A stretch of 64,000 nt of DNA, from contig OZ251232.1 of NCBI GenBank assembly GCA_965240325.2, forward strand, positions 186,001 to 250,000. Direction: 5' to 3'. This document shows positions 11,245 to 14,555 of this stretch, piece after piece (within the stretch, counting starts at the first letter, position 1; every line of letters begins with the position of its first letter). Origin of the DNA: Rebecca billardiae RCC1528. Its lineage: Eukaryota > Protista > Haptophyta. The translations under genes and the position numbers were made by a program. Under the pieces are notes generated by a model. It saw nothing but the letters and a program-made list of their open reading frames with translations, searched no databases and was not told where the DNA came from.

Positions 11245-11557
11245 CTCAGGCCAGCAACGGCCACGGGCAACTGCTTTGTGACCAGTGCCAGGCAGTGCGG
11301 GCCGCCTAGCCGTCGTGCGCGATTGGGCGCTATGTGCAGCGACCTCAGCAAAGGCGCCATCGTCAGCGCCATCGTGGCACAAAACGGTTCAGCTTTGTAA
11401 GCTACCAGGCGGAGATCGCCCAAATCAACCGCCAGATTGAAGGCGGTTTGCGGTCGTTATTAGTCAGCACCGTGCCGTTTCACGCGGGCGGATCTCGCGT
11501 CATCAGCAGCCGGCCCCCCCACTGCTGGACCCAGAGCGCCGCCAAGCCCTGCCAAGC

Positions 11558-12442
11558 ATGCCCACCGCCGAGGAGCGCCGCGCCGAGAAGGAGCGCCAGG
11601 AAGCTGAGATTCGCAAGAAGAATGCGATGATGCAGAAAACGCTCAAGCACACGGGCTCGCGCTCGGACATGGGCCTGTCGCCCGAGGTGGAGCAGGCGCG
11701 CAAGATGGTCGCCGAGCAGTCCAACCGCGAGAAGGAGATGCGCGAGGCGCAGCTGCGCATGCAGAACAAGGAGATGCAGGAGCGGGTGAAGAGCTCGACG
11801 GGGCGCGACGAGAAGGCGCTTGATCCCGAGGTCGAGCGCCAGCGCTCGCTCAACGCCAAGCAGGCCGAGCGGCAGAAGTCGGCGACCAAGGAGGACTTGG
11901 CCAAGCACGCGGCGGCGCTCGCCGAGCGCGTCGCGTCGACTGGGATCCGCTCGGATGTGGCGCTCACGCCCGAGGTGGAGGAGGCGCGGAGGAAGGCCGC
12001 CGAGGAGCGCGCGCGGCAGAAGGCCGCGCAGGAGGCCGAGATGCGCAAACGGAACAAAGACTTCTCCGAGAAGCTTGCGTCCACGCCCGCAAAGGATGCA
12101 AAGTCGTTGCCGCCTGAGACCGAGGCGGCGCGGCAGAGGGCGGCGGAGGACGCGCTGAGGCAGAAGGAGGAGCGCGAGGCGCGGCTGCGCGAGCAGAACA
12201 AGGAGCTGTACACCAAGGTCAAGTCGACCACCGGCCGCGACGAGAAGGGCCTTACGCCGGACGTGGAGGAGGCGCGTGCCAAGGCGGCCGCGGACCGCAA
12301 GCGCGAGGAGGAGGAGAGGAAGCGCGCGCTGGCCGAGCACAAGGCGACGCTTGAGGAGAAGGTGAAGAACACGCCGATGCGCACCGAGGTCAAGCTCGCC
12401 GACGAGACCGAGGAGCGACGCAAGCGCCTCGGCCTCGCCTGA
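11558..12442 (+). CDS. 294-aa charged helical protein with six 48-aa repeats, unknown function
   Basis: Strong host codon bias (AAG/GAG, GC3); repeat core [LI]RxxNxx[MLF]xx[KR][VL]x[ST][ST]xxRxxxxLxP[ED][VT]E. Confidence 0.85.
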   Translation: MPTAEERRAEKERQEAEIRKKNAMMQKTLKHTGSRSDMGLSPEVEQARKMVAEQSNREKEMREAQLRMQNKEMQERVKSSTGRDEKALDPEVERQRSLNAKQAERQKSATKEDLAKHAAALAERVASTGIRSDVALTPEVEEARRKAAEERARQKAAQEAEMRKRNKDFSEKLASTPAKDAKSLPPETEAARQRAAEDALRQKEEREARLREQNKELYTKVKSTTGRDEKGLTPDVEEARAKAAADRKREEEERKRALAEHKATLEEKVKNTPMRTEVKLADETEERRKRLGLA

Positions 12443-12987
12443 CACATCGCGCACGCGTGCCCAGCTCTGGGCCTCGGCCGCGGCGGCGGCAGCAGCCGGG
12501 TGACGCCGCCGCCAGTAGTAGCTTATTGTGTCGCCGCCCCGGCCGTCGTCAACGCCCGGCGGAGCCGGAGACGGCCGCATCGGCATCACCCTTCGGAAAC
12601 CACACGCAGCTGTCAGCGCTAACAGCAGTCTTGCCAGGCGCAAGGCTGGGCCCGCCCAGCGCGGCAGGCCGCAGGCGGCGCGTCGCCGCACCACGGACCG
12701 CCACCGCTCACGGCTCAGACGCAGTTGCGCGCGGCCGCGGGCTAGCGGGCTGCGCCGGGGGCACTGGTGACTGGGGCCCGTCCCGACGGCGGGAGCGCCG
12801 CTATGGCATCCTGCATGAGGCTGATGACGTATTGATGACGGAGTCTGATCCGGCCGCCGACTCTGACGGATGCGTAGAGAGCGTCATACTGCTTCTATAT
12901 ATAATATATATATAGCTCTATATATTAATTATGTAATGAGACATATATTATTATTATATAATGATATAAGCTGATATATATGATTAT

Positions 12988-13029
12988 TATATATTATAAC
13001 TAGTATATATATACTAGTTATAATATATA
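12988..13029. repeat. 42-bp perfect AT-rich palindrome within an AT island
   Basis: TATATATTATAACTAGTATATATATACTAGTTATAATATATA equals its own reverse complement. Confidence 0.85.
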
Positions 13030-13166
13030 TACTATGTCATCGTAGTCAGTGATTGCGTCATCGGCGCGCAGAATAAGACGAGGCCATCCCTGACTTCAGA
13101 CTTGATAGTATCATTTAAATGATAGTTGATGGTCTTGGCGACCCGACGGCAGCGAACCGCCGAACG

Positions 13167-14555
13167 TCACATTGTATGTGTGTCGTCGTCGTGACCGGAC
13201 CTGCCATAAGCCATCACCGGCGGTGGCCGTTGTAGGCGGTGAGCTTCGCCATCGGGCTCGGCATCGCCATCGTACTCAGAACGCCTCGTCGACATCGGCA
13301 TCGAACTGCTACCGCTGCGGCGCGGGGCGGCAGTCAGCACACTACGAGTACGACGGCGGCGAGGCGGACGGCGAGGCGGGCGCCTACTGCTTGATGAGGC
13401 GGGCACGTGTGTCAAATGATTCCTGCCCACGGCCGCCTGCGCCGAGCGGGACTCGGCCCCCTCGACTGCCGCACCCGCCGGCCCCAGCTCGGCGCGCAGC
13501 GCGGCCACTTTTGCCCGGTAGCAGTCCAGGCCCGCGCCCCCGGGCCTGCTCCGCGCGCGCTCAGCCTGCTCGATCTGGGCGCTCAGCCGGTCCTCGAGCG
13601 CGTGGGCGTAAAGCTCGAGGTCGACGCGCACGAGCGAGGCGGCGGCGGCGCGCGCCGTCGCGCTCAGGTCGGCCAGCGAGTGCTTTGGCAGGCCGTGCGT
13701 CACGCGCGTGAGCTTGGGCGCGCTGCGCGCCGCCTTGTGCGTCGGCGCACACTCGCAGTGCGCCGGCAGTGCGCCCAGCGCGTGCGCGGCGAACAGGCAG
13801 ACGCTCTGAGGGTACAGCTCCGTCACGCCGACGAACGCAAAGCGGGCGAGGCCCGCCTTCGCGCGGGTGAGGTCACCGGGCACGTCCGAGCGGCGCACGT
13901 GCCACGCGCTCACGTTCGTCGAGACGTAGCGCGACTGCACATCAATAGGAATGTACCCGTGCGGACCGAGCCCGCTGTCCAGCCGCCGGGCCGAGGGCGG
14001 AGCCGCCAGCTGGCGCGCAAGGTCTGCGGCCCACGTGCCGAAGCCGAGGTGCGCGGGGGCGCACGGCGGCCTGTGCGGCGAGCGTGACGCCCCGCGCGCC
14101 GCGTGCGGGTAGCACTTGGACATGATGAACTGCGAGTACGCCAGCCCGATTGGGTTTCGGAGCAGCACAATAAGCTGCGCGCCGTGCGCCTTGCGCAGCG
14201 AGACGGTGCGTGGGTCGAGCACGGCCTTCTCCTGGCTGCCGCGCAGCGTTGAGCCGACGGGCATGGCATGGGGCGAGTCCTTCATGAACGACACCCCCGC
14301 CGCCTTGGGGATGTGCACGAAGAGGTAGTGGCGCGAGGGCGCGCTCACGCGTGGCACCTTGCCATGCCACACGATGTGGTCGGTGCGCGACAGCCGGCGC
14401 CTCGCCGCCCTGCGCCCGGTGGGCGCAGGGGTGGGTGGGGCCCACAGGCTCAGCTCTGACCCGCGCGCCGAGATGTTGCGCACTGTGCCTGTGCATGGTT
14501 GGACCAAACACACCAAGAGCAACAAGGCCGCCGAGCGTGCGGCGGCGGCGGCCAT
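13167..14555 (-). CDS. Secreted/Golgi sulfotransferase-like protein (3' end uncertain)
   Basis: Signal peptide; 5'-PAPS loop YLFVHIPKAAGVSF; 3'-PB motif LLRNPIGLAYSQF; FAFVGVTE and DLELY. Confidence 0.75.
   Translation of the reverse strand: MAAAAARSAALLLLVCLVQPCTGTVRNISARGSELSLWAPPTPAPTGRRAARRRLSRTDHIVWHGKVPRVSAPSRHYLFVHIPKAAGVSFMKDSPHAMPVGSTLRGSQEKAVLDPRTVSLRKAHGAQLIVLLRNPIGLAYSQFIMSKCYPHAARGASRSPHRPPCAPAHLGFGTWAADLARQLAAPPSARRLDSGLGPHGYIPIDVQSRYVSTNVSAWHVRRSDVPGDLTRAKAGLARFAFVGVTELYPQSVCLFAAHALGALPAHCECAPTHKAARSAPKLTRVTHGLPKHSLADLSATARAAAASLVRVDLELYAHALEDRLSAQIEQAERARSRPGGAGLDCYRAKVAALRAELGPAGAAVEGAESRSAQAAVGRNHLTHVPASSSSRRPPRRPPRRRRTRSVLTAAPRRSGSSSMPMSTRRSEYDGDAEPDGEAHRLQRPPPVMAYGRSGHDDDTHTM

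What the first reader, a model, noticed from the sequence alone, without database searches (positions are those of the whole stretch)
11558..12442. Protein of six gap-free 48-aa repeats with a 3-repeat super-period: candidate microtubule-lattice ruler
Seen: from residue 15 the protein divides into units of exactly 48 aa with no indels, starting EAEIRKKNAMM, EAQLRMQNKEM, KEDLAKHAAAL, EAEMRKRNKDF, EARLREQNKEL and KRALAEHKATL (the last is 40 aa). Each unit is a long charged helix broken by a S/T-x-x-R-x-x-x-x-L-x-P-E linker. Units 2 and 5 share VKS[ST]TGRDEK.L.P.VE, and 1/4 and 3/6 also resemble each other, giving a 144-aa super-repeat. Inference: about 36 helical residues (~5.4 nm) plus about 12 extended residues could span roughly one 8-nm tubulin dimer, so six units would span ~48 nm and the super-repeat ~24 nm, which are established axonemal periodicities. 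Candidate axonemal, flagellar-root or haptonemal microtubule-binding protein.
Basis: partly seen in the sequence, partly recalled or inferred. Interest (0 to 1): 0.7.

Follow-up and report, generated by a model that had tools for sequence, protein, structure and literature searches.

The report
Conserved 48-residue helix-loop repeat protein
This haptophyte gene encodes six copies of a 48-residue helix-plus-loop unit that belongs to an undescribed repeat family shared by many algal lineages, and its strictly kept helix length suggests binding to a periodic partner such as a microtubule, which nothing here demonstrates.

Summary
Window 11558-12442(+) is an intact, probably single-exon ORF of 294 aa (GC3 0.93). 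From residue 15 it has six gap-free 48-aa units. Identity is 0.38 at lag 48 and 0.44 at lag 144, both z about 15.

The window protein has no Pfam match, no PDB sequence match and no paralogue in its own genome. An exhaustive HMMER search found 49 relatives carrying the same unit. Named sources are Cymbomonas, two Chlamydomonas species, Chlorokybus, Chromera, the dinoflagellate Polykrikos and a pennate-diatom MAG.

Across the family the period is 48 (78 of 141 spacings), 49 or 50. Nearly all length changes fall in the loop, so the 38-residue helix keeps its length. The conserved residues (N8, L26, R34 and others) line one mixed basic and hydrophobic helix face.

Unit number ranges from 2 to 14, so a fixed 48-nm or 24-nm ruler is not supported. 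Some relatives have an N-terminal EF-hand pair.

Fifteen of 50 members weakly match Pfam Hmw_CFAP97, a family seen in solved axoneme structures, and one exceeds the curated cut-off. Profile-profile tests are not significant (P 0.11-0.23).

Microtubule binding is plausible but untested, and I could get no expression data. Interest is moderate.

The parts
11558..12442 (+). Complete coding sequence, 294 aa plus stop, apparently one exon
   Evidence: ORF list and translation. GC3 is 0.93. The N-terminus M-P-T-A-E-E-R and the C-terminal R-R-K-x-L-G-L are shared with Chlamydomonas orthologues P0005 and P0028. No further exon was found downstream.
11558..11599 (+). N-terminal 14 residues, the start of the first helix, conserved in the orthologous subgroup
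   Evidence: Comparison with P0005, P0028 and P0029. AF2 places a helix at residues 4-32.
11600..11743 (+). Unit 1 (residues 15-62)
   Evidence: Own-genome profile hit at 72.8 bits.
11744..11887 (+). Unit 2 (residues 63-110)
11888..12031 (+). Unit 3 (residues 111-158). It lacks the conserved Asn, as does unit 6.
12032..12175 (+). Unit 4 (residues 159-206), counterpart of unit 1
12176..12319 (+). Unit 5 (residues 207-254), counterpart of unit 2 (50% identical)
12320..12439 (+). Unit 6 (residues 255-294, 40 aa), ending in the family's terminal R-R-K-R-L-G-L motif

Best explanation
Shown here: this is a real, complete gene for a member of an unnamed repeat family that is conserved across distant algal and protist lineages. 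Each unit is one alpha-helix of about 38 residues, whose length is invariant across the family, followed by a conserved loop of 10-17 residues (G-R/K-D-x-K-x-L-S/T/D-P-E-V-E). The loop ends in a helix N-cap. The conserved helix positions form one stripe of mixed hydrophobic and basic residues: V30, R34, L37, R41, K45, L4, N8, L11, L15 in unit numbering.

Inferred, not shown: the protein most likely lies along a periodic acidic polymer, and the microtubule lattice is the best candidate. Each helix would contact the surface through its conserved stripe, and the loop would take up the slack to the next site. A 38-residue helix spans about 5.7 nm, and a 10-residue loop can add up to about 3.5 nm, so one unit could cover one 8.2-nm tubulin dimer.

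It is not a fixed-length 48-nm ruler, because unit number varies widely among relatives. The stated confidence refers to the lattice-binding mechanism. That the gene is real and the family exists is near certain.
For: Gene and repeat.

Family: 49 relatives at E<1e-3 among 1.84 billion cluster representatives, the best at 1e-43, all carrying the same unit.

Period: 48 in 78 spacings, 49 in 17 and 50 in 21, out of 141. Insertions fall after unit positions 17-19 and 25, with almost none inside the helix.

Column statistics over 178 distinct units: R34 97%, L26 93%, N8 85%. My arithmetic on that table puts the conserved helix positions within one 100-degree arc, with mean entropy 1.9 bits against 2.6 bits for the other helix positions.

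The protein is basic (pI 9.5) although 21% of its residues are acidic.

AF2 predicts isolated long helices and no compact fold, with pTM 0.20 without and 0.32 with an alignment.

Hmw_CFAP97 (PF13879) is by far the most frequent Pfam match among family members, apart from the EF-hand families of the fused N-termini: 15 of 50 at E<=1, one at 27.4 bits over the 25.6-bit cut-off. The matches span profile positions 15-99, so two Asn-containing helices 48 residues apart align with the two such helices of CFAP97. CFAP97-family chains are present in solved doublet-microtubule structures 8snb, 8otz, 9e2g, 9e78 and 9v10. CFAP97D1 is described as an outer-surface doublet protein that sits with EFCAB3 and TSSK6 (PMC13066092, PMC13406575).

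Eight of 50 relatives carry an N-terminal EF-hand pair.
Against: The window protein itself has no Pfam hit even at E<=10.

Profile-profile comparisons with CFAP97 alignments are not significant: P 0.036 for a 13-column match (hhalign probability 1.4%), and P 0.11-0.23. The family's unit HMM does not detect this genome's own CFAP97 genes. A two-unit family profile finds ApoA-I and KMP-11 in the PDB rather than CFAP97 chains.

A Chlamydomonas orthologue matches no chain in the PDB at a meaningful E-value; the only hit is a designed coiled-coil protein at E 0.93. It is therefore not a modelled axoneme component.

The family is present in a pennate-diatom MAG. No named hit comes from an animal, a ciliate or a kinetoplastid.

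A conserved helix length can also arise from helix-helix packing within the protein.
Confidence: 0.3

Rival explanations
1. It is a self-supporting helical repeat scaffold or spacer. The 38-residue helices would either pack antiparallel on one another, as hairpins or three-helix bundles like spectrin or apolipoprotein, or behave as stiff charged single alpha-helices joined by hinges. The conserved length would then reflect internal geometry rather than an external lattice.
For: The 3-unit super-period of 144 aa would suit a three-helix module. Hydrophobic positions cluster near both ends of each helix, where they could form a small core across the loop. A two-unit profile weakly matches ApoA-I (E 0.012), and P0001 weakly matches Pfam Apolipoprotein (E 0.0038, 17 bits against a 90-bit cut-off). 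The composition, rich in E, R, K and A, is typical of single alpha-helix segments.
Against: AF2 predicts no helix packing, with or without an alignment (pTM 0.20 and 0.32). Only about 15% of residues are non-alanine hydrophobics. An Arg conserved at 97% and a Lys at 67% sit on the same face as the hydrophobic positions, which is unusual for a buried core. There is no 11- or 22-residue periodicity. The three-unit pattern is specific to this lineage: relatives show runs of 2, 3, 4, 5, 6 and more units.
Confidence: 0.3
2. It is specifically an axonemal, flagellar-root or haptonemal CFAP97-type outer-surface protein.
For: PF13879 hits in 15 of 50 relatives, collinear with both Asn helices. CFAP97 family members sit on doublet microtubules in solved structures. 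The genome keeps 6-7 true CFAP97 genes, so it builds flagella. Two relatives, P0030 and P0055, have N-terminal PG-rich motifs whose only Pfam hit is SHIPPO-rpt, at E 0.3-0.7 and below the cut-off.
Against: The homology is not statistically supported. No orthologue is found in solved Chlamydomonas axoneme models. The family is present in a pennate-diatom MAG. No named hit comes from animals, ciliates or kinetoplastids, all of which have axonemes. The N-terminal half of the CFAP97 domain (H-x-x-R-L ... P-x-I/V-D ... Y-x-H-L) has no counterpart here (one search compared).
Confidence: 0.12
3. It is an array of docking sites for a small partner protein, for example an EF-hand protein, one per unit, in the manner of Sfi1 with centrin.
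For: Eight of 50 relatives fuse an EF-hand pair to the repeats. Each unit has a short basic amphipathic segment, L4-N8-L11-R14-L15.
Against: None of the centrin-binding or IQ motifs known to me is present (inspection; the motifs are from my knowledge). The window protein has no EF-hand. A conserved stripe that runs the whole 38-residue helix is longer than a typical EF-hand target.
Confidence: 0.1
4. It is a hydrophilic stress or LEA-like protein, or a disordered charged protein without a specific partner.
For: Highly charged, low-hydrophobicity composition. No known domain. Some sources are stress-tolerant algae: the Antarctic Chlamydomonas sp. UWO241 and the subaerial Chlorokybus (their ecology is from my knowledge).
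Against: Position-specific conservation of 85-97% at N8, L26 and R34, and an invariant helix length between lineages as distant as chlorophytes and haptophytes, are not expected of a purely bulk-property protein. There is no LEA Pfam hit and no 11-mer period.
Confidence: 0.1

Closest known systems
Hemingway/CFAP97 domain (Pfam PF13879; CFAP97, CFAP97D1/D2)
   Same: Both have two helices carrying the motif [LI]-x-x-E-N-x-x-L-x-x-[KR]-[LM], about 44-48 residues apart and separated by a loop. Fifteen of 50 family members hit the Pfam model at E<=1, and one exceeds the curated cut-off. A greedy profile alignment is collinear through both motifs. CFAP97 proteins are microtubule-bound in solved axonemes.
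   Different: The window protein does not hit the model. Profile-profile P values are 0.11-0.23. The N-terminal half of the CFAP97 domain is absent. CFAP97 has one such pair of helices, not a long array. The loop motifs differ: S-L-N ... R-R-R-E-L in CFAP97 against G-R-D-x-K-x-L-S-P-E-V-E here.
Long-helix microtubule binders (stathmin-like domain, MAP7 microtubule-binding helix)
   Same: The idea that a charged alpha-helix of some 40-55 residues can lie along a protofilament and span one tubulin dimer (my knowledge of those structures). The protein is basic overall.
   Different: There is no sequence similarity. No Stathmin or MAP7 Pfam family appears for the window protein or among the top families of its relatives. 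In this protein the helices are interrupted every 48 residues by a conserved loop.
Apolipoprotein A-I / KMP-11 type proline-punctuated helical repeats
   Same: Tandem helices broken at regular proline-containing turns. These are the top, though marginal, PDB hits of a two-unit profile, at E 0.012 and 0.06.
   Different: The period is 48, not 11 or 22. Hydrophobic content is far lower. The Pfam Apolipoprotein score is 17 bits against a 90-bit cut-off, and in one relative only. The KMP11 model finds nothing in this genome.
Filament rulers built of tandem helical modules (nebulin, tropomyosin, CCDC39/40)
   Same: A conserved module length with a variable module sequence, the logic of one module per lattice subunit (my knowledge).
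   Different: There is no homology. Total length is not conserved here (2 to at least 14 units), so the protein would at most be a lattice-register binder, not a length-setting ruler.

Membership tests
Unnamed 48-residue helix-loop repeat family (defined here) | Tandem units with a period of 48-50 residues, where the helix part is free of gaps | tested here: met
   The window protein has five spacings of exactly 48. The family mode is 48.
Unnamed 48-residue helix-loop repeat family (defined here) | Signature residues L4, N8, L11, L15, G-R/K-D-x-K-x-L26, S/T/D27-P-E-V-E, R34 | tested here: met
   These residues are present in units 1, 2, 4 and 5. Units 3 and 6 lack N8, and unit 6 lacks the Pro. 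Significant matches to relatives range from E 1e-43 to 1e-3.
Hmw_CFAP97 (PF13879) | Score at or above the Pfam gathering threshold (25.6 bits) | tested here: not met
   The window protein has no hit at E<=10. One relative, P0002, scores 27.4 bits. Fourteen others are below the threshold.
Hmw_CFAP97 (PF13879) | Significant profile-profile similarity to CFAP97 domain alignments | tested here: inconclusive
   hhalign P is 0.11-0.23, against 0.5-0.9 for reversed controls. The motifs align collinearly. The CFAP97 alignment was small (6-16 sequences), so the test has low power. The unit HMM finds nothing in this genome's own CFAP97 genes.
Hmw_CFAP97 (PF13879) | N-terminal segment H-x-x-R-L ... P-x-[IV]-D ... 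Y-x-H-L ahead of the first Asn helix | tested here: not met
   The segment is seen in this genome's CFAP97 genes and is absent from the window protein.
Modelled axonemal proteins (microtubule inner proteins and outer-surface MAPs of solved doublets and central pair) | Sequence match to a chain in a solved axoneme structure | tested here: not met
   No PDB hit for the window protein. The Chlamydomonas orthologue P0005 has no meaningful hit; its only hit is a designed coiled-coil protein at E 0.93. The unit profile and the two-unit profile match no axonemal chain. Structural hits to filamentous axonemal chains have Z<=7.1 with rmsd of about 100 A, which is noise by the tool's own note.
Stathmin | Match to the Stathmin Pfam model or to a solved stathmin chain | tested here: not met
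   Searches list none.
LEA / apolipoprotein-type amphipathic repeats | An 11- or 22-residue periodicity and a family model match | tested here: not met
   Apart from a marginal 0.168 at lag 193, no lag other than multiples of 48 exceeds 0.16 identity. The window protein has no Pfam hit. ApoA-I appears only at E 0.012 with a two-unit profile.
Microtubule-associated protein (functional class) | Binding to tubulin or microtubules, or cytoskeletal localisation | not testable with these tools
   This needs co-sedimentation, imaging or multimer modelling.

The most novel reading that the evidence does not exclude
The 48-residue unit is an iterated form of the Asn-helix module of CFAP97/Hemingway. 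It would constitute a previously unrecognised microtubule outer-surface binding repeat that reads the 8-nm tubulin-dimer register, one unit per dimer. Algal lineages would have expanded it into arrays of 2 to 14 or more units and, in some paralogues, coupled it to an EF-hand pair to make lattice binding Ca2+-sensitive. In a haptophyte that could bear on Ca2+-triggered microtubule rearrangements such as haptonema coiling.
Probability: 0.15. Interest if true: 0.75.

Novelty: new variant of a known kind. Interest (0 to 1): 0.45.

Why it matters
Pfam has no model for this unit, and my limited paper searches found no description of it. Even so, its helix length and three residues are kept from chlorophytes and a streptophyte alga to haptophytes, diatoms, dinoflagellates and a chromerid.

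The spacer sequence varies while the spacer length does not, which points to a geometric constraint. If that constraint is the tubulin lattice, the unit would be a new and easily testable microtubule-binding module. It could also explain how the small CFAP97 proteins sit on doublets. If the constraint is internal helix packing, the unit is a new helical repeat fold.

Either way, the family alignment built here (about 180 units) is enough to define a new domain model.

Tried and rejected
- Word-indexed protein search of the window protein: no hit among 8000 candidates, probably swamped by low-complexity words.
- ESM Atlas search by features: no usable hit.
- Foldseek against the PDB, VIA-align wide and Atlas search by shape: only generic long-helix noise.
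- Own-genome searches with the protein and with the unit profile: no paralogue.
- Search for a downstream exon resembling the C-terminal tail of the Chlamydomonas orthologues: none found, and the gene ends at the conserved L-G-L.
- Word search with Chlamydomonas sp. UWO241 P0005, to find a named C. reinhardtii orthologue: it found only itself.
- KMP-11 lead: the Pfam KMP11 model finds nothing in this genome.
- N-terminus of P0030 against the PDB, to test a link to PG-rich ciliary proteins: no hit.
- JGI metagenome scan for close relatives: none found. The alignments were too variable for the pattern scan.
- Pfam scan of seven neighbouring ORFs: no families, so no contextual clue.
- Paper searches for a 48-residue repeat family and for the geometry of CFAP97 on the doublet: nothing usable beyond CFAP97D1 being an outer-surface doublet protein that sits with EFCAB3 and TSSK6. 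The Cell 2023 sperm-tail paper is not held.
- Spurious ORF: rejected, because GC3 is 0.93 and there are 49 homologues.
Full report
**1. The observation**

Window 11558-12442 on the + strand is an ATG-to-TGA ORF of 294 codons.

Residue identity is 0.38 at lag 48, 0.34 at lag 96, 0.44 at lag 144 and 0.32 at lag 192. Apart from a marginal 0.168 at lag 193, no other lag exceeds 0.16. In 2000 shuffles the mean is 0.097 with s.d. about 0.02, so z is about 15 for both lag 48 and lag 144.

The linker motif and the string shared by units 2 and 5 are as described, with small departures in units 4-6. The three-unit super-period is real but modest. Of the 15 ways to pair the six units, (1,4)(2,5)(3,6) scores highest, at 0.44 against 0.41 for the next. 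Units 3 and 6 are the only ones that replace the conserved Asn.

The frame is coding: GC at codon positions 1, 2 and 3 is 0.69, 0.44 and 0.93. The two long antisense ORFs are the usual by-product of that bias. At the DNA level the copies are about 54% identical and Tandem Repeats Finder does not report them, so the array is old.

**2. Gene limits**

The frame is open for 39 codons upstream of the ATG. However, the N-terminus M-P-T-A-E-E-R-R-A-E-K matches the start of the homologous region in the Chlamydomonas sp. UWO241 protein and in the C. euryale protein. The C-terminal R-R-K-R-L-G-L matches their R-R-K-N-L-G-L and R-R-R-A-N-L-G-L.

The green-algal proteins continue with a 40-75-residue tail. 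I found no such exon within 1.5 kb downstream. I therefore take the ORF as complete.

**3. Structure**

AlphaFold2 predicts helices 4-32, 42-80, 90-127, 138-175, 186-224 and 234-271, plus a short last one, separated by loops of about 10 residues. pTM is 0.20 without an alignment and 0.32 with a 35-row family alignment. The secondary structure is confident, but no compact fold is predicted.

Structure searches returned only generic long-helix matches. VIA-align gave Z<=7.1 with rmsd of about 100 A, and Atlas gave TM<=0.31. I give these no weight, although many of the rows are filamentous axonemal proteins. That reflects a shape class, not kinship.

**4. Known families**

The window protein has no Pfam match at E<=10 and no PDB sequence match at E<=10. 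The word-indexed protein search found nothing, and the genome holds no paralogue, whether searched with the protein or with the unit profile.

**5. Relatives**

The exhaustive HMMER search found 49 cluster representatives at E<=1e-3, eight of them at E<=1e-10, with the best at 1e-43. All carry the same unit.

Named sources are:
- Cymbomonas tetramitiformis
- Chlamydomonas sp. UWO241
- C. euryale
- Chlorokybus atmophyticus
- Chromera velia
- Polykrikos kofoidii
- a Bacillariaceae MAG
- MMETSP transcripts

The rest are environmental assemblies. No named hit is from an animal, fungus, land plant, ciliate or kinetoplastid. No relative is closer than 50% identity, and a JGI metagenome scan found no close relative.

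**6. The period is conserved**

I built a unit HMM from the window's units, iterated it over the hits, and measured the distance between successive units. Of 141 spacings, 78 are 48, 17 are 49 and 21 are 50. The tandem range is 46-55, and larger values mark a skipped or degenerate unit.

Inserted residues fall after unit positions 17-19 (132 residues) and 25 (15 residues). Only 14 fall inside the helix, and only five match positions are ever deleted. So the 38-residue helix has the same length from chlorophytes to diatoms, and only the loop varies.

Unit number is not conserved. It is 2 in C. euryale, 3 in UWO241, 6 in the window protein, 10 in the diatom MAG and at least 14 in Cymbomonas. That removes the basis for reading six units as 48 nm and three units as 24 nm.

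**7. What is conserved within the unit**

Over 178 distinct units, the best-kept columns are:
- R34 (97%), L26 (93%), N8 (85%)
- L/I/M4 (98% hydrophobic), position 15 (89% hydrophobic), position 11 (82% hydrophobic)
- G20, R/K21, D22 and K24 in the loop
- S/T/D27, E29 and E31 at the helix start
- K45

S/T/D followed by Pro and Glu is a standard helix N-cap, and the Gly is a standard C-cap (my knowledge). Part of the loop's conservation is therefore structural.

At 100 degrees per residue, helix positions 30, 34, 37, 41, 45, 4, 8, 11 and 15 all fall within one 100-degree arc. Their mean column entropy is 1.9 bits, against 2.6 bits for the other helix positions (my arithmetic). So one face of the whole helix is conserved. 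It mixes hydrophobic residues near both ends with Arg, Lys and Asn in between.

The protein has pI 9.5.

A nearly invariant Arg on the same face as the hydrophobic residues fits an interface with an acidic partner better than a buried core. This is an inference.

**8. The CFAP97 question**

Among the 50 family members, the most frequent Pfam match, apart from the EF-hand families, is Hmw_CFAP97. It is hit by 15 members at E<=1, with a best E of 6e-6 and 27.4 bits in P0002, over the 25.6-bit cut-off. No other coiled-coil-like family is hit by more than three members.

The matches cover profile positions 15-99 in stretches of 72-89 residues. Two Asn-containing helices 48 residues apart are thus laid on the two such helices of the CFAP97 domain.

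This genome has 6-7 genuine CFAP97 genes elsewhere. In the shortest of them the two Asn residues are 44 residues apart (my count).

A profile of those genes finds CFAP97-family chains in solved doublet microtubule structures 8snb, 8otz, 9e2g, 9e78 and 9v10. CFAP97D1 is described as an outer-surface doublet protein that sits with the EF-hand protein EFCAB3 and the kinase TSSK6 (PMC13066092, PMC13406575).

The results against homology are:
- hhalign of one-, two- and three-unit family profiles against CFAP97 alignments of 6 and 16 sequences and a six-sequence short-linker subset gives P 0.11-0.23, except for one 13-column match at P 0.036 (hhalign probability 1.4%). Reversed controls give 0.5-0.9.
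- A haptophyte CFAP97 HMM scores real family sequences only about 2 bits above their shuffles.
- The family's unit HMM does not detect the genome's CFAP97 genes.
- A two-unit profile retrieves ApoA-I (E 0.012) and KMP-11 (E 0.06) from the PDB rather than CFAP97 chains.
- The N-terminal half of the CFAP97 domain has no counterpart in the window protein.

My reading is that the two share a motif at a shared spacing, and may be distantly homologous, but this is not demonstrated. The window protein cannot be filed as a CFAP97 family member.

**9. Other clues**

Eight of 50 relatives have an N-terminal EF-hand pair, with E down to 5e-15. The window protein has none.

Two relatives, P0030 and P0055, have PG-rich N-termini whose only Pfam hit is SHIPPO-rpt, at E 0.3-0.7 and below the cut-off. 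That region has no PDB match.

The Chlamydomonas sp. UWO241 orthologue has no meaningful PDB match; its only hit is a designed coiled-coil protein at E 0.93. The orthologous group is therefore not among the modelled proteins of the Chlamydomonas axoneme structures.

The family is present in a pennate-diatom MAG. Together with the lack of named hits from animals, ciliates and kinetoplastids, this argues against a core axonemal role. It does not argue against binding to cytoplasmic or other microtubules.

**10. Mechanism**

Shown: the gene is real, the family exists, the helix length is invariant, one helix face is conserved, and no compact fold is predicted.

Inferred: the protein lies on a periodic, acidic surface, one unit per repeat of that surface. 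A 38-residue helix is about 5.7 nm long, and a 10-residue loop adds up to about 3.5 nm. That brackets the 8.2-nm tubulin dimer, and the variable loop would act as slack. I put this at about 0.3.

The main rival, also at about 0.3, is that the length constraint is internal, through hairpin or bundle packing or a chain of stiff single helices. Smaller shares go to an array of docking sites for an EF-hand partner and to a hydrophilic stress protein.

The specifically axonemal or haptonemal reading is about 0.12.

**11. Novelty and score**

I found no Pfam model and no paper for this unit. The searches were limited.

It is a new repeat family of a familiar general kind: charged helical tandem repeats, possibly cytoskeletal. 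Its function is unknown, so interest is moderate at 0.45. It would rise to about 0.75 if the unit proved to be an 8-nm-register microtubule module related to CFAP97.

Noticed in passing
window 12890-13050: A sharp AT-rich island of 12-17% GC in a genome of about 68% GC, partly TA-rich low-complexity sequence with a 33-bp tandem unit. It lies between the 3' ends of two convergent ORFs, 11558-12442(+) and 13167-14555(-). It may be a shared terminator or intergenic element.
   Followed up: partly
G000 loci L002-L008 (contigs C33, C20, C21, C12, C10): The genome holds 6-7 Hmw_CFAP97 domain matches, six of them above the Pfam cut-off. One lies in a 1307-codon open frame (L003), and several have loops of 40 or more residues between the two Asn helices. 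That seems a large family for a unicellular alga.
   Followed up: partly
P0001 (Cymbomonas tetramitiformis KAK3271649.1), residues 1-600: At least 14 units of the same 48-residue repeat, most of them nearly identical to one another, which implies recent array expansion or homogenisation. They are followed by about 700 residues of unrelated low-complexity sequence.
   Followed up: no
P0006, P0009, P0010, P0047 (diatom-like relatives), C-termini: Besides the repeats, these share a separate C-terminal helix (K-R-[LI]-x-V-A ... Q-x-[HQ]-N-x-x-L-x-x-R-L). In P0006 this helix is the part that matches PF13879, at E 0.006.
   Followed up: no
P0030, P0038, P0041, P0049: A variant of the unit whose loop reads A-A-T-D-N-D-[IV]-T-D-D instead of G-R-D-x-K-x-L-S-P-E, with a period of 48-49. 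It occurs behind EF-hand pairs or PG-rich N-termini.
   Followed up: no
window 11480-12694 (-) and 11503-12447 (-): Two antisense ORFs of 404 and 314 codons overlap the gene. Their translations are Leu/Arg/Ala/Ser low-complexity sequence, and they are most simply by-products of the sense strand's GC3 of 0.93.
   Followed up: yes
window 13167-14555 (-) and other neighbouring ORFs: Seven flanking ORFs of 238-461 aa have no Pfam family at E<=0.001. In this GC-rich genome, many may not be genes.
   Followed up: partly
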